From Octopus bimaculoides (lineage: Eukaryota): a stretch of DNA of 37,032 bases. Position numbers and translations under genes: made by a program. The DNA is taken from assembly GCF_001194135.2 (NCBI RefSeq), contig NC_068989.1:76143211-76180242 (forward strand). The letters run 5' to 3'. The notes beneath the pieces are model-generated. The model saw only the letters and a list, made by a program, of their open reading frames with translations. It was not told where the DNA came from and did no database searches. Positions 3,165 through 33,773 of this stretch are shown here, piece after piece. The first letter of the stretch is position 1. Each line of letters starts with the position of its first letter.

Positions 3165-3430
3165 TTCAGGCAGCGAGCGGACAGATTCCTGCTCAAAAAT
3201 GATTAGCAGCATTTCTTCCGTTTTTATATTTCTGAATCTAAATTCCGCCGAAGTTGACTTTGCCATTCTCTTGTTTTTTTTTTTTTTTTTTTTTTNNNNN
3301 NNNNNTTTTTTTTTTTTTGTTTTTTTTCCGTGGACGATTAAATATCATACCAGCTAAGCACTGGGATCAATGTAATTGACTTTCTCCTCCCCTAAAAATT
3401 TCAGGCCTTGTGCCTATAGTAGAAACTACC
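3165..3430 (+). mobile_element. Decayed SINE family 1 copy with an internal poly-T and gap
   Basis: aaattccgccgaagttgactttgcc, ctgggatcaatgtaattgac and aaaatttcaggccttgtgcctatagtagaaa all match family 1. Confidence 0.65.
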
Positions 3431-3559
3431 ATTTATTATTATCGAACGTCTCCCTCCCTACTGACGGTTATACATTGTCGTTGTATTTCTTTTCCATTAC
3501 GGTAATCTTGTTTACACACAAAACCCCAACAACAACACACACTCACAACCACCCAAACA

Positions 3560-4281: not shown

Positions 4282-5004
4282 ACAAAGTAAGTGAACCTGC
4301 TGGCAGGTGTATATGTCGGTGTTGTGGATTATTAGTTCAACTACGTTCTGCAATGCTTCAAACGCCAGTCTTACTTATTGTGATATATATTTACTCGATC
4401 ATTCGTTTGCATACCCTCTCCCTAAATGTTTAAATGTTTCGCTCTGTGACAAACTTACTCAGCTACTGGACATCTACGTTCAAAAATATACACATTCACA
4501 AATCCGTTTATCCGTACAGTCATAACATATAATAAATACATTTGGGATATGCATTCGTAAGTACAAACATACACACACACAGCTCCACAGACCCTCCACA
4601 CACAACCCACAAGCATATATACATACATACACATACTTATATATTATACCCAATTAGTCTGTCACATACCTGCATATACGTACACATCCCTACGCGCATT
4701 TACAGATATATATATATACACACACACATATACATATATATATATAAACTTACCTACACATCTACCTACATCGAAATAGGTAGGTACACCATGTGCGGTT
4801 GTCAGTCGTGGCCGACAGTCAGCGCACATTGACTGCGGCTCCTGTACTCCGTTCCTAATTTAGATAATCATCAGCATATCTGTCGGGGCGACACTTCTGA
4901 ATTAACTGCGAAAACTCGACAAATTTTATCAAGGGACAAAGGGCCAAAAAGTAGATAAAAACAACAATAATTTAATTTAACATAATAAGCGATAGTCTCT
5001 AACG

Positions 5005-5724
5005 ATGGAATCGGAATTATGTCCAACACCTAAATCACCAAATCGCCCAAGTTTGGGTTCAAAATCATCGGAATCACTAGAAGAAACGAGCCCTTTGAAC
5101 TCAACTACAATGGAATGTACTGAATGCCCCGAATTCCCGGAATGCCCCGAATGCCCGGAATGCCCTGAATGCTCGGAATGTCCGGAATATCCAGAATGTC
5201 CAGAATATCCGGATAATGATCTTGAACCTTCAGAAAATGGCGAAGAAGCGTGTAATACGGAAGATAAAGAACTTGCATTGTCCATTTCAGAAGAATTGAT
5301 GGAACCGACCGATCCTACGATTTCGGTATCAGAAACTTTCTTAGAAGACATGGAAACAATTGGATCTTTAGATGACCTTACAGAAGCAAATTCAATGACG
5401 CAAGAATTTCCAGAATCTATGACCGAAGAAAATTCCTATGACCAACGAGACGACTTAACTCATCAAGTACCGGAAGAATCCTTAACTACTGAATCTGCCG
5501 TTTTGGCATTAGTCGAAAGTTTGGAAACTACTGGGGAAAGAACATTGGGAGTTCTGGATGTACCTGCAACGTTGGAAATCCCTTTTACAGAAACATTACA
5601 ACCAACAGGAAGTATTATGGATGGACCAATACTGACAACATCAGAACATCAACTTTATGTGGAGTGTAGAAAGTCTGTACTAATGGAACCGCAGGGTCCG
5701 GTAAGAACGAGAGAACTGGATAGT
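5005..5724 (+). CDS. First coding exon (240 codons) of an unidentified Glu/Thr/Ser-rich, probably disordered protein with an (E-C-P)n tract
   Basis: ATG 5005 in a good Kozak context (A at -3, G at +4) with an in-frame TAG upstream at 4993-4995. It is 720 nt of non-microsatellite open frame in AT-rich DNA. It ends at the phase-0 donor AGT/GTGAGT (5724/5725), after which composition becomes intron-like. An alternative phase-0 donor CCG/GTAAGA lies at 5700/5701. Confidence 0.8.
5113..5211 (+). repeat. Coding 9-bp minisatellite, 11 units, consensus GAA TGY CCN
   Basis: Units: ECT ECP EFP ECP ECP ECP ECS ECP EYP ECP EYP. Most variation is at third codon positions. Confidence 0.95.
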
Positions 5725-5864
5725 GTGAGTTTCTATGTTTGTTTTATGAATTTATTCATTTCAAAGCAATATGTCTCTTAACAGTTTGTCAATAGAATTT
5801 TGCAAGCATCAAATTTGGTTATTTTGTTTGGTATTTATATGTTAATAATATCTAATATTATCGT

Positions 5865-7250
5865 GTAAATTCCGTCGAGGTCGATGTTTTTTTTTGTCCT
5901 TCCGGCGTCGATAAAATAAATACTAGTTGATCGCTGGGGTCGATGTAATCGACTTCCTCCTCCCCTATCGAAATTGTTGATCTTGTACCAAAATTTGAAC
6001 CCACTATCTATATTATCATGTTTATAAGAAACAAACAACAAAAAAAGAAAATGGTTTCCATTGAAATACTTTGTAGGAAAAAGAGAGTAAACAGAGAAAA
6101 CACGTTACTCTAAAGTTATTCTATTTGTCTATTTTTTTTTTAGAGAAAATATTAAGAAACATTGCTTTCAAGATTTTAGACAGTTTTATTACTAAATGGT
6201 TGGTATGGCAGGATTTGAACTCAGAACGTAAAAACTTTCTCTAAATACCGCTGGTATTTTGTCCGTCGGCCTAGCAGTTTTGTCAATCCACGGCCGCTCT
6301 GAAGTACATATTTCCTTCCATGTATGCCAAAATATGAAACCGATATTAACAAAATATGAAACCAATATTAACAATAATGGAGCGAGCTGGCAGAATAGTT
6401 AGCACGATGAGCTAATTGCTTAGAGACATTTCGTCCATCGCTACGTTCTGAAATCAAATTCCGCCGAATTCGATTTTGCCCTTCATCCTTTCCTGGAAAT
6501 AAATCCCAGTTGAAATCGCTGTACTTGTTCCAAAATTTGAAACCAATACTAATGTTAACAGTAGATTTGCTGCATCGGTAGAGTATCAAACAAAAATTTA
6601 TATGGTATATTTAAATCCAGTTATTTTGTTTCTGAGTTCAAATTCCTCTACGAACAACTTTGACTTTCAGTTTTCTCAGCTTCTTTAACATTAGTTTCAA
6701 TAAAGTGCTGATCGATATACTAATTTGTACTCAATCCTTCCTAAATTTGAGACATTCTGACTATGTGAAAAATGGATATTATACATTGTTCAAGGAGAGT
6801 AGATTAACTTAATAGTTTGCGCGTCAGATACAATTTTTACACTATTGATTTCGCTACTTTACTTTCTGGGCTCAAGCCCCGTCAACGTTAAACATTGCCA
6901 TTCATCATTCTGGGGTCGATAAAACAAATATCAGTCAAATAACGGGTAGAATTAATTGATCATACTCATCCTGGGTATATTAACCTTGTGTCTGTATTAG
7001 AAATCAGTATTTTGCGGATTAGCAAAATCCTTAGGTATTTAGTTACAACCCTTTGCATTCTGAGTTTAAGCTCCGCCGATGTCAGCTCTTGTTTTCAGGA
7101 TTGTTAATAATATTATAGGTATCAGTGAAGTTACGAGTGCCTCGATTTAAACCATTTGGGGATCTTTTGCGCAAAAATCAACATGGCTCTATGTCAATGA
7201 GAGGTCAAATTTGCCTTTCATCATACCGGGGCCGACAATCTTCTCACAAA
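5865..7250. mobile_element. Cluster of decayed SINE family 1 fragments in both orientations
   Basis: Recurring ttctgagttcaaattc(c/g)gccgaggtcgac...ggggtcgat motifs at about 5865-6005 (+), 6205-6298 (-), 6380-6550 (+), 6570-6760, 6820-7010, 7015-7110 and 7195-7240 (+). Confidence 0.7.
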
Positions 7251-7527: not shown

Positions 7528-7748
7528 ATTTCACGCTGCTCCAGCCCACTCAGCTGGCAAAAATGAGTAGTTCCTGTATTTCAAAGGGTCATCCTTGTCA
7601 CACCCTGTGTCATGCTGAATCTCCCTGAGAACTACGTTAAGGGTGCACGTGTCTGTGGAATGCTCAGCCACTTGCACGTTAATTTCAGGAGCAAACTGTT
7701 CCGTTGATCGTATGAGCTGGGACCCACGTCGTCGTAACCGATAGAGTG
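7528..7748 (+). mobile_element. 3' part of SINE family 2
   Basis: Reverse-complement match to 33395-33600, e.g. gaatgctcagccacttgcacgttaatttca. Confidence 0.85.
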
Positions 7749-7801
<53 letters not shown>

Positions 7802-8109
7802 CTTCACCTAACTTATCTTATATAGGTATCTTAGGTACCAGAAATTTGAAAATATTGTGAGTTTTCATTACTTTCTAGTGCAGGATACAATGTAAAGACG
7901 GGCCATTTTATTCGCCTGTTAAACATATGCCTTTTAATCTTTCTAGTTTTACGGTCTTGCACAAACCCTCCTGGGAATGAAAGAGGAAACTATCCACAAA
8001 CCAGAGGTGCGGCACGAATGCTTGCTACGGAATGGACACCGCTACAGGCATTCACAGCACCAAATTGTGTTGATGTTAAACCCGGTGACGTATTAAATCT
8101 GTTACACAA

Positions 8110-12319: not shown

Positions 12320-13569
12320 TAGTTGAAATAATGAAAACACCTTGTTTCTTGTTCAATGGAAATTTATTATTTAATACGAAGTTGGCTTTCCTCTGTCATC
12401 AATTACAACACACCTTTAATACGTCGAGGATTCACTCGTGCAGGTTCTTAAGGTTTCTCAAAGTAATTTTAAGTAATTTTAAGTAATTCCTCGAAGAAAA
12501 ATCTACTTTAGTTCGTCCAGCGATGATGATATTTGTAATATTAAAAGCGAAGCAGCTCCTCACTTTCTACTCCAAAATGTACAATAAATCCTCGATTTTA
12601 TTGAGGTCCGGTGATTGTTGGGTGGCGGGGAAGGGGCTTTCAAATGCTCTACTTCTCTTTTGTGTTCTTCATACCAATAGTAGTAGTCATGGAAGTCGAT
12701 GCATTATCGTTCTGGAAGATTGTGCTACCACCAGGGAACAATGTTTGTACCATTGGATGAATATGATTAGCCAAAATACTCACATCATCCATGTCGTTAA
12801 TTCTGCTTTGTAGAAGAACTAAAGAACCGGAAGAGTTCAATGATATGGCTGTCCAAATCATCACAGAACCTCGTTTTCGATCAGACAGTCAGAATCGAAA
12901 GCTTCGTCGTGCTCTTTCCAGATATAAGGTCACCCTGAAGTGGAAGGGAAAAGGTGTGAATGAATATTTGTCAAAGAAGACGACATTGCTTCATTTAGCC
13001 ATTGAACACTTCTGGTAGCCTAGACACCAATTTTTCTGCTTGTCAATGTCGATGGGGAGCAGGAAAAATTTAGCAATTTCAGTTTTCCCAAGGTATCCAG
13101 CTTTATGGAACTCACGACAAACGGTTTTGATTGACACAGAATTGACAAGCTAGTTGTTAAGTTCTGTCATTTTTGCTGCTGTAATTCGATGGTTTTTAGA
13201 CATAATTTGTTTCATAATTCTGTGATGCCTCTCTGTAAGGTTTGCCTTCCGTCTAGAATTATGCTTGTCAAAGTTGGTTTTACTGTGGTTTTGTTCTCCC
13301 GACATGATTTTTGAGACTGTAGTTGTCAGTCCTTCAACAAATTGTCCTCTTCAGAAATCAGATAAGACACGCATTTTTAATATAAAATATCTGCAAAAAA
13401 GGAAAACAGAAGGCTATATCATGAAGTACTTGGCATACATTCACATGAACACATATACACATACGCACGCGCGCACACACACGTGGAGTAGTTTTGAATT
13501 TGTCATATTGTCAATAGAAAAAAAAATAGTTAAATAAAAATGGGTGCTTCCATTATTTTGTGTAACCTG
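12320..13569 (-). mobile_element. Decayed full-length Tc1-family DNA transposon (about 1.25 kb)
   Basis: Degenerate inverted termini aaataatgaaaacacc (12326-12341) and ggtgcttccattatttt (13543-13559) flank a transposase pseudogene. Confidence 0.85.
12371..13374 (-). pseudogene. Tc1-like transposase pseudogene
   Basis: Recognisable blocks: MRVLSDF*RGQFV; KHNSRRKANLTERHHR; SVSIKTVCREFHKAG; VVFFDKYSF (first D); GSVMIWTAIS; HIHPMVQTLFPGGSTIFQNDNA (second D); QSPDLNKIE (E); IPRRIKGVL; GKPTSY*. Multiple stops and frameshifts. Confidence 0.9.
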
Positions 13570-13658: not shown

Positions 13659-13891
13659 GGCGGCGAGCTGGCAGAAACGTTAGCACCCCGGGCGAAATGC
13701 TTAACGGTATTTCGTCTGCCGTTACGTTCTGAGTTCAAATTTCGCCGAGGTCGACTTTGCCTTTTATCCTTTCGGGGTCGATTAAATAAGCACCAGTTAC
13801 GCACTGGGGTCGATGTAATCGACTTAATGCCTTTGTCTGTCCTTGTTTGTCCCCTCTATGTTTAGCCCCCCCCCCCGTGGCAATAAAGAAA
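13659..13891 (+). mobile_element. Near-intact SINE family 1 copy with a Tx1-type tail and probable target-site duplication
   Basis: A/B boxes intact, ends in gcaataaagaaa. Flanked by aatatt(a)9ca (13632-13648) and aatatt(a)7ca (13894-13908). Confidence 0.88.
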
Positions 13892-25245: not shown

Positions 25246-25658
25246 ACTTTTAGGCAAAAGATTTATCTTTGTTCTTTCCTCTATTGCACTGACGCGACTT
25301 TTAAGTTCTTTCTTCTCGTTTTGTTCTCACGTTCGTTCTTATATACATATGTGACTGTCTGTGTATATATGTATGTATGTTTGTGTGTATTGAATATATC
25401 AACATACAAAGTGTTTCGTCAATGCACTGACACCTCTGAGTAATGAATTTATACAATCAATTAGTTGAAGCTCAGGTTTCGGTTTCACTCCTCCTGCATA
25501 CTCTATATCACGATTGTCGAGACGGTGACGCGATAGAAATCGGACACTCAGAATTTGCACTGCGTATGAAGTATGAAGTTCGTCAACGACTGACTAAACT
25601 TTAGTACATTATACTCAGTTTCACTCTTTCTCTTTTGTTTGTATTTCCAAATATATGC

Positions 25659-25691
<33 letters not shown>

Positions 25692-25721
25692 TGTATGTAT
25701 GTATGTATGTATGTATGTATG

Positions 25722-25980
25722 ATTATATGTCTGTGCACACGTTTGAATATGGTGTGTACCAGAAGGCTTGCAAATCCAATGGGGGTCTTAAAAGACATGT
25801 TAGGATCCACAATGAGCAGAACTTACCTGGAGGTAATGGTAGTACAAATCAGAGGTGCAATCTGTGTGGATGTTTTTTCAAAACATTGTCTAGTTTAAAA
25901 AGCCACATCAGACGCCATGAAGGGGCTAAGGTGTAGGTGCAGGAGGTGGTCAAACTCTGTGGAAGGAGTAAACAACCACC
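25722..25980 (+). mobile_element. 5'-truncated tail of an RTE-like LINE with two C-terminal C2H2 zinc fingers, embedded in (ATGT)n
   Basis: Intact finger CNLCGCFFKTLSSLKSHIRRH (25856-25918; C-x2-C-x12-H-x3-H) and a degenerate finger YGVYQKACKSNGGLKRHVRIH. No TGEKP linker. Stop at 25934-25936, 44-nt UTR, then a microsatellite tail, which is the known RTE layout. Confidence 0.65.
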
Positions 25981-32279: not shown

Positions 32280-33388
32280 GTAGGGATTATCAGGTCGAAA
32301 ACTTTGCCTGTTTATTTGCAACAAAGCTTACAGCAATAAAAACGCAGAAGAGCCAAGTGACGGTTTTAAATCGTGTAACGGACGACATACATGAATAGCA
32401 GTCATATACTGATTCAAGTCGACCGAGCTTACCTTCTTACTACAAATTGCTGGCCATGTGCCACTGCGTGAAAATCTTTAATAAACTATCCTAGATGACA
32501 GTGCAGATTAACTAGAGAAAGTAACAGATTTCTTTTCAGTATTTCAAAACTTACCTGGAGTCCACATTTATTTTAACTCAGTAATAGCCTGAAGCCGACA
32601 ATTCGTATACCTCTGAGGACATTTTATCAATTTTTAAAGTTGAATTTCTAAGTAGATCTTTCAAGAAGCTATACCAGATATTTCTTTCTTAGTCAAATAA
32701 AAGTATGTCACGATCATAATTGTTTTCTCGGTATGAATGACAAAAATGAAGTGTGATACCTTAAAATTTAGTTATGGAGACAAATTTGCAGGTACACCTT
32801 ATTTAAAGTCATATTATCCTCTGAAGCGTTTGCGCATATATGCGTATTTCATCATCGATTAATTTCATCTACGTGCTGGCTCATCTTTTTAAATATCTCA
32901 AGAATTCGTAGAGCCGGTTTTTAACTTTCGATTCAACAGTAAATAGACGATTGATAATTGTTGTGCTGGATACGACAGGCATCGCACACAAATCCCTTTT
33001 CAAACCATTGCTCTCCTAGTGCTTATTTTCTGCCCATTAAGATGAGTCTACGAGGGAGCTTTTACATGAACACTGTATGCAATCTGCAAGAAATAAAAAT
33101 GTAATGACACCAAATCGTTTGAATAATGTATCCCAGCTTGAATAATGACTGAAAAGATTGAATAATGTGTCCCAGATTATATTATGACTGAAAAAAAGAT
33201 GGGATGGTTATGAGTAGATTGTTTTTGATGATAGATCTGCTCAATCAGATCCGAATAAGAACTAAACAACAGTAAGAACAACAGTACATGCAATGAAGTA
33301 TTAAGCATCATGTTCTGATACCCAACTAAATACTTGCAAACAAGATGTCAAGATGAAACAGGAATTAGTAGTTTAATACATTATGCAC

Positions 33389-33773
33389 TGTTGTTGGCAC
33401 TCCGTCGCTTACGACGTCGAGGGTTCCAGTTGATCCGATCAACTGAACAGCCTGCTCGTGAAATTAACGTGCAAGTGGCTGAGCATTCCACAGACACGTG
33501 TACCCTTAACGTAGTTCTCGGGGATATTCAGCGTGACACAGTGTGACAAGGCTGACCCTTTGAATTTCAGGCACAACAGAAACAGGAAGTAAGAATGAGA
33601 GAAAGTTGTGGTGGAAGAGTACGGCAGGGTTCGCCACCATCCCCTGCCAGAGCCTCTTGGAACTTTAGGTGCTTTCGCTCAATAAACACTCACAACGCCC
33701 GGTCTGGGAATCGAAACCGCGATCCTGTGACCGCGAGACCGCTGCCCTAACCACTGGGCCATTGCACCTCCAC
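33389..33773 (-). mobile_element. Full-length tRNA-derived SINE, family 2, with a perfect 14-bp target-site duplication
   Basis: A box TGGCCCAGTGG (33751-33761, minus) and B box GGTTTCGATTCCC (33706-33718, minus). TSD aatacattatgcac at 33375-33388 and 33774-33787. Confidence 0.93.

What the first reader, a model, noticed from the sequence alone, without database searches (positions are those of the whole stretch)
5005..5724. Unidentified acidic protein with a (Glu-Cys-Pro)n tract giving chained CxxC motifs
Eleven tripeptides place Cys at every third residue in 8 of 11 units, including C-P-E-C-P-E-C-P-E-C-S-E-C. The three exceptions are all aromatic (F, Y, Y). Glu is invariant and codon variation is mostly synonymous, which suggests selection on the peptide. 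A period-3 Pro-rich chain should favour a polyproline-II helix with thiols aligned on one face and carboxylates on another. That geometry could serve soft-metal binding (Cu/Zn/Cd), disulfide cross-linking or multiple S-acylation. The flanks are E/T/S-rich and probably disordered. I recognise no family; the function is inferred.
Basis: partly seen in the sequence, partly recalled or inferred. Interest (0 to 1): 0.7.

Follow-up and report, generated by a model that had tools for sequence, protein, structure and literature searches.

The report
Acidic orphan protein with Glu-Cys-Pro repeat
The tract is real and lies in a genuine, selectively conserved first coding exon of an acidic, probably disordered protein with no recognisable relatives, but what its eight evenly spaced cysteines do (most likely bind soft metals) remains an untested inference.

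Summary
Window 5005-5724 (+) is 240 codons of the only long non-repeat ORF in the window. Eleven units, ECT ECP EFP ECP ECP ECP ECS ECP EYP ECP EYP, occupy 5113-5211 and are encoded by a 9-bp tandem repeat.

The exon is truly coding. Against the one related genomic sequence found (L001/L002, another species), dN/dS is 0.11, and 28 of 42 differences fall on third codon positions. All indels are in frame. Residues 76-199 show 0 non-synonymous and 11 synonymous changes. A GTGAGT donor at 5726 and a non-conserved downstream stop indicate a first exon.

The tract changes unit number (11 versus 9) but has 8 Cys in both species. The three aromatic "exceptions" are single-base neighbours of Cys codons, so they need no special explanation.

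No Pfam, PDB or library homologue exists. Other CP[E/D] tracts found elsewhere (a phage contig, a membrane-stalk protein, a CAP-domain protein) are convergent low complexity. There is no signal peptide, the pI is 4.05, and the AlphaFold model is low-confidence throughout.

Function is inferred only. Binding of soft metals (Zn, Cu, Cd) by the cysteine thiolates is my preferred reading at about 0.35. A tolerated coding minisatellite is nearly as likely. The tools here barely cover animal proteomes or transcriptomes, so orphan status and expression are untested.

The parts
4735..4934 (+). Conserved upstream block, a candidate core promoter and 5' leader. It has TATATAAA at about 4741-4748 and a predicted stable RNA fold.
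   Evidence: Divergence from L001 is 5.5% here (3% over 4735-4834), against 26% at 4935-4984 and 17% downstream of the exon. The RNA fold z-score is -2.72, with 0 of 200 shuffles folding as well. No Rfam family matches. The role is inferred.
4791..4832 (+). Short upstream ORF (MCGCQSWPTVSAH, then a stop) in a strong ACCATG context.
   Evidence: Read. It is present in L001 with one S-to-N change. Its function is untested.
5005..5725 (+). First coding exon: 240 codons plus 1 base, phase-1 donor. The ATG has A at -3 and G at +4, and an in-frame stop lies at 4993-4995.
   Evidence: ORF. dN/dS is 0.11 with 29 synonymous and 13 non-synonymous changes (Fisher p = 2e-11). Differences by codon position are 8/6/28, and indels are 18 and 6 nt. 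In L001 there is no AG between the upstream stop and the ATG.
5005..5109 (+). N-terminal Ser/Pro-rich segment (residues 1-35) with three S/T-P sites and no hydrophobic signal sequence.
   Evidence: Translation and motif scan.
5113..5211 (+). (Glu-Cys-Pro)-type tract of 11 units with Cys at residues 38, 41, 47, 50, 53, 56, 59 and 65. It is a coding 9-bp minisatellite.
   Evidence: TRF period 9; units and codons. The relative has 9 units and 8 Cys, with an 18-nt indel in the first block.
5230..5601 (+). Highly constrained acidic region (residues 76-199), with one predicted helix at residues 162-176.
   Evidence: 0 non-synonymous against 11 synonymous differences over 124 codons. A run of 161 identical bases spans 5227-5387. 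pLDDT is below 60 throughout.
5726..5731 (+). Candidate 5' splice site, GTGAGT.
   Evidence: The donor is identical in L001. The read-through stop at 5779-5781 is TAT in L001, and divergence rises to 17% downstream. No transcript evidence was available.

Best explanation
Shown: 5005-5725 is the first coding exon of a real gene that has no detectable relatives beyond one close species. It encodes the N-terminal 240 residues of a very acidic, non-secreted, largely unstructured protein. The (E-C-P)n tract is a coding 9-bp minisatellite. It gains and loses units by slippage but is held in frame and kept rich in Cys, Glu and Pro by purifying selection.

Inferred: the tract acts as a flexible thiolate module flanked by carboxylates that binds soft metal ions (Zn2+, Cu+, Cd2+). 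Its eight Cys at i/i+3 spacing form overlapping CPxC pairs. They could wrap ions in metallothionein- or phytochelatin-like thiolate clusters, or bridge two chains through shared ions. The strongly conserved acidic region downstream would carry a separate function, probably partner binding.
For: Coding and selected:
- It is the longest unique ORF in the window, expected 3e-4 times by chance.
- dN/dS is 0.11, with third-position bias and in-frame indels.
- Residues 76-199 show 0 non-synonymous changes.
- The exon is not part of any dispersed repeat in the window.

Tract under peptide-level constraint:
- Both within-tract diversity and between-species changes are biased to synonymous sites.
- There are 8 Cys in both species despite 11 versus 9 units.

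Non-secreted: there is no hydrophobic N-terminus or transmembrane stretch, so the thiols should be reduced and free to bind metal.

Chemical precedent: ribosomally made (Glu-Cys)n peptides, the 'synthetic phytochelatins' EC8-EC20, are reported to bind Cd (PMC4292183). CxxC and CPxC pairs are classic Zn/Cu ligand pairs (established knowledge).
Against: - No metal-binding family is matched.
- Single Cys positions are replaceable by Tyr or Phe, and unit number varies, so no fixed coordination site is defined.
- Non-synonymous divergence is 3-6 times higher in the tract than in the rest of the exon (dN 0.075 versus 0.013-0.026).
- The low dN/dS in the tract may be inflated by mis-registered repeat units.
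- Only one other sequence was available.
- Metallothioneins lack aromatic residues and are small, and this protein is neither.
- Expression, tissue and the rest of the gene are unknown.
Confidence: 0.35

Rival explanations
1. The tract is a tolerated coding minisatellite with no specific biochemical role. It must only stay in frame, soluble and harmless. The protein's function lies in the conserved acidic region and in exons outside the window.
For: - Unit number differs between close species, and Cys/Tyr swaps occur.
- dN in the tract is several-fold higher than in the rest of the exon.
- The relative's units are homogenised to CCT, which indicates unit turnover.
- Similar CP[E/D] tracts arise independently in unrelated proteins.
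- The strongest constraint lies elsewhere, at residues 76-199.
Against: - Variation within and between species is still biased about 3- to 10-fold towards synonymous sites.
- Cys count is the same in both species.
- Free surface cysteines are usually selected against unless they are used (general knowledge).
Confidence: 0.3
2. It is a disulfide cross-linking structural module. Rows of Cys on an extended, Pro-stiffened chain would form interchain disulfide ladders, as in the IgG hinge (CPxCP), or as in sperm-tail and cornified proteins with Cys tripeptide repeats.
For: - Period-3 Cys spacing on an extended chain favours interchain over intrachain bonds (geometry, established knowledge).
- Cys-Gly-Pro repeat proteins of Drosophila sperm (the Mst(3)CGP family) are a precedent for Cys-containing tripeptide-repeat proteins (PMC10645079).
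Against: - There is no signal peptide, so the protein would sit in a reducing compartment unless it is expressed in a special cell type.
- The register (C-P-E) and the strong acidity differ from C-G-P/C-X-P proteins.
- There is no sequence similarity to them.
- Tissue is unknown.
Confidence: 0.12
3. It is a multiple S-acylation (palmitoylation) site that anchors the acidic protein to membranes, like a cysteine-string region.
For: Eight clustered cytosolic Cys. Cysteine strings are known acylation sites (established knowledge).
Against: Every Cys is flanked by Glu and Pro. There are no basic or hydrophobic neighbours and no membrane-proximal element, a context unlike known acylated strings (sequence; knowledge-based judgement).
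Confidence: 0.05
4. It is a heme-binding array. There are seven Cys-Pro dipeptides (residues 6, 41, 47, 50, 53, 59, 65), the minimal heme-regulatory motif.
For: CP dipeptide count. CP motifs bind heme in Bach1, HAP1, ALAS1 and IRP2 (established knowledge).
Against: In the tract the residue after CP is always Glu rather than hydrophobic, and the net charge is strongly negative. Both disfavour binding of heme, whose propionates are anionic (knowledge-based, not tested).
Confidence: 0.05
5. It is not a functional gene, only a chance ORF or a decaying pseudogene.
For: No transcript evidence and no annotated homologue were obtainable here.
Against: - dN/dS is 0.11 with p = 2e-11, and indels are in frame.
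- The ORF is kept in a second species while the flanks diverge 10-17%.
- The missing homologues are uninformative, because these libraries hold almost no proteins from this kind of genome.
Confidence: 0.03

Closest known systems
Synthetic phytochelatins (alpha-linked (Glu-Cys)nGly, EC8-EC20) and natural phytochelatins ((gamma-Glu-Cys)n-Gly)
   Same: Alternating Glu carboxylates and Cys thiols in a short, flexible, ribosomally encodable repeat. Eight Cys here compares with EC8. These peptides are reported to bind Cd (PMC4292183).
   Different: Here a Pro follows every Cys, so the period is 3 rather than 2. The tract is embedded in a protein of at least 240 residues. Natural phytochelatins are made enzymatically with gamma-linkages. 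No metal binding has been shown for this tract.
Metallothioneins
   Same: A locally high Cys density (8 of 33 residues) with CxxC spacing and no other obvious fold.
   Different: The protein is large and only 4.6% Cys overall. It has aromatic residues within the tract, is Glu/Pro-rich rather than Lys/Ser/Gly-rich, and gives no Pfam hit.
Cys tripeptide-repeat sperm proteins (Drosophila Mst(3)CGP family, Cys-Gly-Pro; mammalian ODF1 C-X-P repeats)
   Same: Tandem tripeptide repeats with one Cys and one Pro per unit, encoded by short DNA repeats (PMC10645079; ODF1 from my own knowledge).
   Different: The register is mirrored: Pro directly follows Cys and Glu precedes it. The context is strongly acidic, and there is no sequence homology. 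Tissue is unknown.
Immunoglobulin hinge core (CPPCP; IgG3 CPRCP repeats)
   Same: CPxCP strings on an extended, Pro-stiffened chain, with Cys at i/i+3 (my own knowledge).
   Different: Hinges are secreted and disulfide-bonded. This protein has no signal peptide.
CPxC metal or redox pairs (zinc-ribbon and rubredoxin knuckles, Rad50 zinc hook, glutaredoxin/DsbA active sites)
   Same: The CPEC tetrapeptide is a canonical CPxC pair (my own knowledge).
   Different: Those motifs work inside a defined fold. Here they overlap in a low-complexity tract with no predicted fold.
Convergent CP[E/D] tracts found here (P0002-P0006)
   Same: Runs of CPECPE or CPDCPD of 6-10 units.
   Different: The proteins and contexts are unrelated: a phage contig next to a lysin, a metagenome contig, a membrane-stalk protein and a CAP-domain protein. 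Similarity is confined to the tract.

Membership tests
Metallothionein | Small protein (under about 10 kDa) with 15-30% Cys overall | tested here: not met
   The exon alone is 240 aa and 26.5 kDa, with 11 Cys (4.6%).
Metallothionein | No aromatic residues; Cys in C-x-C, C-C or C-x-x-C arrays | tested here: not met
   F and two Y lie inside the tract. Only C-x-x-C spacing is present.
Metallothionein | Match to a metallothionein sequence family | tested here: not met
   No Pfam family at E up to 10 apart from two sub-threshold unrelated hits.
Metallothionein | Binds metals in thiolate clusters and is metal-inducible | not testable with these tools
   Needs biochemistry and expression data.
Phytochelatin | (gamma-Glu-Cys)n-Gly made by phytochelatin synthase, not ribosomally | tested here: not met
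   The tract is encoded in an ORF with alpha-peptide bonds and a Pro in each unit.
Mst(3)CGP / ODF1 C-X-P repeat proteins | Cys-Gly-Pro or Cys-X-Pro tripeptide register | tested here: not met
   The unit is Glu-Cys-Pro, that is C-P-E, with Pro immediately after Cys.
Mst(3)CGP / ODF1 C-X-P repeat proteins | Sequence homology to family members | tested here: not met
   phmmer against 1.84 billion representatives returned only tract-limited matches. That library is poor in animal proteomes.
Mst(3)CGP / ODF1 C-X-P repeat proteins | Male germ-line specific expression | not testable with these tools
   No transcriptome data are reachable.
Thioredoxin-fold CPxC oxidoreductases | CPxC at the N-terminus of a helix within a thioredoxin fold | tested here: not met
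   No Pfam thioredoxin, glutaredoxin or DsbA hit. The model is coil with pLDDT about 43 over the tract.
4Fe-4S ferredoxin-type motif | CxxCxxCxxxCP within a Fer4 domain | tested here: not met
   The spacing is CxxCxxCxxCxxC, and there is no Fer4 Pfam hit.
Heme-regulatory motif (CP motif) proteins | Cys-Pro dipeptide followed by a hydrophobic residue; heme binding | tested here: inconclusive
   Seven CP dipeptides are present, but each is followed by Glu or Thr. Binding is not testable here.
Secreted hinge or stalk CPxCP tracts | Signal peptide or membrane anchor placing the tract in an oxidising compartment | tested here: not met
   The N-terminus MESELCPTPKSPNRPS... is hydrophilic. An in-frame stop lies 4 codons upstream, and the relative has no acceptor AG there.

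The most novel reading that the evidence does not exclude
This would be a gene-encoded, phytochelatin-like soft-metal chelator: a ribosomally made (Glu-Cys-Pro)n module on an acidic carrier protein that buffers or stores Zn, Cu or Cd in the cytosol.
Probability: 0.15. Interest if true: 0.65.

Novelty: new variant of a known kind. Interest (0 to 1): 0.35.

Why it matters
If the tract binds metals, it would be a natural, ribosomally encoded counterpart of phytochelatins, built from a tripeptide unit not described before. It would also give a concrete candidate for non-metallothionein metal handling in an animal group known for accumulating Cd, Cu and Ag.

Independently of function, it is a clean example of a coding minisatellite. 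Unit number drifts while amino-acid composition, Cys count included, is held by selection. It sits beside an acidic region that looks disordered yet did not change at the protein level between the two species compared. If it is only a tolerated repeat, it is an ordinary lineage-specific low-complexity protein.

Tried and rejected
- **Family and structure searches.** A Pfam scan of the exon found only two sub-threshold unrelated hits. PDB sequence searches with the exon and with the tract alone found nothing meaningful.
- **Word-indexed protein search (5.8 billion proteins).** It found one true relative, P0001, and one tract-only match.
- **Exhaustive phmmer (1.84 billion representatives).** It found the same relative plus four tract-only matches. 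Two of their contexts were inspected and are unrelated, one a phage contig and one a metagenome contig.
- **Exact look-up of the window's own ORF.** It is not on record.
- **Metagenome scan with the non-repeat part.** No relative was found.
- **AlphaFold2, single sequence.** Mean pLDDT was 43.5, so I ran no fold search because it would be meaningless.
- **Search for downstream exons.** I scanned all plus-strand stop-free segments of 30 aa or more after 5726 against Pfam. Only a sub-threshold C2H2 finger fragment at 25598-25933 appeared. It is flanked by microsatellites and is not evidently part of this gene.
- **Internal repeats in the acidic region.** None stood above shuffled controls.
- **Dual coding on the minus strand.** Rejected, because the 124-aa antisense ORF is truncated in L001.
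- **RNA structure in the 161-nt invariant run.** Rejected, z = -0.5.
- **Rfam and tRNA scans of the window.** Both were empty.
- **Literature searches.** Searches for the run accession and for ECPECPECP found nothing useful.
- **Database coverage control.** A Tc1/mariner relic from the window found a single Logan hit. The absence of annotated homologues is therefore weak evidence.

Full report
**1. The observation**

The window is an AT-rich draft sequence of animal type: 35% GC, nine N gaps totalling 4696 bases, and abundant (TA)n, (CA)n and (TGTA)n microsatellites.

At 5005 an ATG opens an ORF of 258 codons that ends at 5781. The stop-free stretch 4996-5778 (261 codons) is by far the longest non-repeat ORF in the window. 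It is expected about 3e-4 times by chance at this base composition.

Residues 37-69 (nt 5113-5211) read ECT ECP EFP ECP ECP ECP ECS ECP EYP ECP EYP. CPECPECPECSEC occupies residues 47-59. Tandem Repeats Finder calls a period-9 array at 5122-5206 with consensus GAATGCCCG.

**2. Is it a gene?**

The only true relative in the libraries is P0001. It comes from two 1.3-kb Logan contigs, L001 and L002 (runs SRR11869384 and SRR11869391). These contigs also carry the flanking non-coding DNA, so they are genomic.

Divergence from the window varies by region:

| Region | Divergence from L001 |
|---|---|
| Exon | 6% |
| Upstream flank | 10% |
| Downstream flank | 17% |

Within the exon the pattern is that of a coding sequence under purifying selection:
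- 28 of 42 differences are at third codon positions.
- There are 29 synonymous and 13 non-synonymous changes, giving dN/dS of 0.11 (Fisher p = 2e-11).
- The only indels are 18 and 6 nt, both in frame.

The start codon is well supported. It has A at -3 and G at +4. An in-frame stop lies four codons upstream. In L001 there is no AG between that stop and the ATG, so the ATG is the start of the coding sequence rather than an internal exon position.

At 5726 there is a perfect GTGAGT, conserved in L001. The read-through stop at 5779-5781 is not conserved (TAA versus TAT), and divergence rises after it. I therefore read 5005-5725 as a first coding exon with a phase-1 donor. No transcript evidence was available, so a single-exon gene that reads through to 5781 is not excluded.

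The exon is unique within the window. Dispersed SINE-like repeats begin only at 5867.

**3. Anatomy of the product**

The 240 residues comprise four parts:
- a Ser/Pro-rich head (residues 1-35) with three S/T-P sites;
- the Cys tract (residues 36-72);
- a very acidic body (residues 73-200);
- a less acidic tail (residues 201-240).

Overall D+E is 58 against K+R 10, and pI is 4.05. There is no hydrophobic N-terminus or transmembrane segment. The single-sequence AlphaFold2 model is low-confidence throughout, with mean pLDDT 43.5 and one helix at residues 162-176. That is compatible with intrinsic disorder but is weak evidence on its own.

Against that picture, residues 76-199 have 0 non-synonymous and 11 synonymous differences. 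Positions 5227-5387 are identical base for base. This region is therefore the most constrained part of the exon, not a loose spacer. All five non-synonymous changes after the tract lie in residues 200-240.

**4. Evolution of the tract**

The relative reads ECT ECP ECP ECP ECS ECP QYQ ECP ECP. The landmarks ECT, ECS and the Tyr unit are shared. Only the block between ECT and ECS differs in unit number, five units against three.

Cys is present in both species in 7 of the 9 alignable units. One unit has Tyr in both. One is Tyr in the window and Cys in the relative. Total Cys is 8 in both.

Pro codons are mixed in the window (CCC, CCG, CCT, CCA) but mostly CCT in the relative, which indicates unit turnover. 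The tract behaves as a coding minisatellite.

Selection on the peptide is visible:
- Within the window, diversity among units is 0.55 and 0.76 at the Cys and Pro third positions. It is 0.47 and 0.35 at two non-synonymous sites and 0 at the other four.
- Between species, the tract has 9 synonymous and 6 non-synonymous changes (dN/dS about 0.1). Mis-registered units could inflate the synonymous count.
- dN in the tract (0.075) is 3-6 times higher than in the rest of the exon.

The 'aromatic exceptions' are single second-position changes of TGY, to TAT twice and to TTC once. Only Tyr, Phe or Ser can arise that way, so no selection for aromatic residues need be invoked.

**5. Homology**

- Pfam gave nothing.
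- PDB sequence searches gave nothing.
- The exhaustive phmmer search of 1.84 billion representatives gave only tract-limited matches (P0002-P0006).
- A metagenome scan gave nothing.

The tract-limited matches are unrelated proteins: one on a phage contig beside a lysin, one on a metagenome contig, a membrane-stalk protein and a CAP-domain protein. CP[E/D] runs therefore arise convergently.

As a control, a Tc1/mariner relic from the window found only one Logan protein. This shows that these libraries hold almost nothing from this kind of genome. 'No homologue' here does not establish orphan status.

A scan of plus-strand stop-free segments downstream found no recognisable domain exon within the window.

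**6. Mechanism**

Shown: the exon encodes a real, selected, non-secreted acidic protein with eight Cys at i/i+3 spacing. Each Cys is preceded by Glu and most are followed by Pro. Everything beyond that is inference.

- **Soft-metal binding by thiolates (about 0.35).** I favour this reading. In a reducing compartment the thiols are free. CxxC and CPxC pairs are standard Zn/Cu ligands. Alpha-linked (Glu-Cys)n peptides with 8-20 Cys are reported to bind Cd (PMC4292183).
An ideal polyproline-II helix spaces successive Cys about 9 A apart. Neighbouring Cys could chelate one ion only if the chain bends into CPxC turns. Otherwise ions or disulfides would have to bridge two chains.
- **Tolerated minisatellite (about 0.3).** This is the main rival, supported by unit-number drift, Cys/Tyr swaps and the higher dN in the tract.
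- **Interchain disulfide cross-linking (0.12).** This would resemble the IgG hinge or the Cys-Gly-Pro sperm proteins (PMC10645079). It requires an oxidising context, which the lack of a signal peptide argues against.
- **S-acylation and CP-motif heme binding (0.05 each).** Both are disfavoured by the uniformly acidic neighbours of the Cys residues.
- **A non-gene (0.03).** This is essentially excluded by the substitution pattern.

**7. Comparison and novelty**

The tract works most like a phytochelatin analogue or a metallothionein-like cluster. It fails the membership tests for both: size, Cys fraction, aromatic content, linkage and Pfam match. It is not homologous to the C-G-P/C-X-P repeat proteins, and its register is mirrored relative to theirs.

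I rate it a new variant of a known kind, namely Cys tripeptide-repeat or low-complexity thiol-rich modules. The caveat is that NCBI and cephalopod resources could not be consulted.

If it proved to be a metal chelator in an octopus, it would bear on the unidentified cytosolic Zn/Cu/Cd-binding proteins of cephalopod digestive gland (PMC5397501). I put that at about 0.15.

**8. Verdict**

Its function is unknown and the evidence base is thin, with one related sequence and no expression data. Interest is moderate, at 0.35.

Noticed in passing
window 5227-5387: A run of 161 bases is identical between the window and L001, although synonymous divergence elsewhere in the exon is about 0.17-0.2. It is not explained by a conserved antisense ORF (truncated in L001) or by RNA structure (z = -0.5).
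   Followed up: partly
window 4735-4934: An upstream block is more conserved (3-5.5% divergence) than the stretch just before the ATG (26%) or the intron (17%). It starts with TATATAAA at the edge of a microsatellite. It folds into stable hairpins (z = -2.72, 0 of 200 shuffles as stable). The one difference inside the first hairpin breaks a pair rather than compensating. No Rfam family matches it.
   Followed up: partly
window 4791-4832: A 13-codon upstream ORF (MCGCQSWPTVSAH) in a strong ACCATG context is retained in L001 with one Ser-to-Asn change. It may be a regulatory uORF.
   Followed up: no
window 5867-6017, 6382-6492, 13663-13825, 2052-2159, 3313-3443: Copies of a dispersed SINE-like repeat, 72-80% identical to one another. 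The nearest starts about 140 bases after the exon.
   Followed up: partly
window 12652-13350 (minus strand): A degenerate Tc1/mariner transposase relic, broken by stops. Its concatenated pieces match P0007 (HTH_Tnp_Tc3_2 plus DDE_3 domains) at E = 2e-27 and 37% identity.
   Followed up: partly
window 25725-25940 (plus strand): An isolated C2H2 zinc-finger fragment (CNLCGCFFKTLSSLKSHIRRH preceded by a degenerate finger) lies between two (TGTA)n microsatellites. It is sub-threshold in Pfam (E = 0.03) and is probably a relic.
   Followed up: partly
window 7534-7803 (minus) and 33319-33543 (plus): Two stop-free segments translate to near-identical peptides (…RRRG.QLIRSTEQ.A.EINVQVAEHSTDTCTLNVVL…). 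This indicates another dispersed repeat family in inverted orientation.
   Followed up: no
L003 188-460 (phage-like contig, SRR23854657): A 90-aa acidic protein with ten consecutive CP[D/E] units sits immediately upstream of a GH108-type lysin gene in a phage-like gene block containing a Mu-type portal gene. It is an independent occurrence of the same kind of tract.
   Followed up: no
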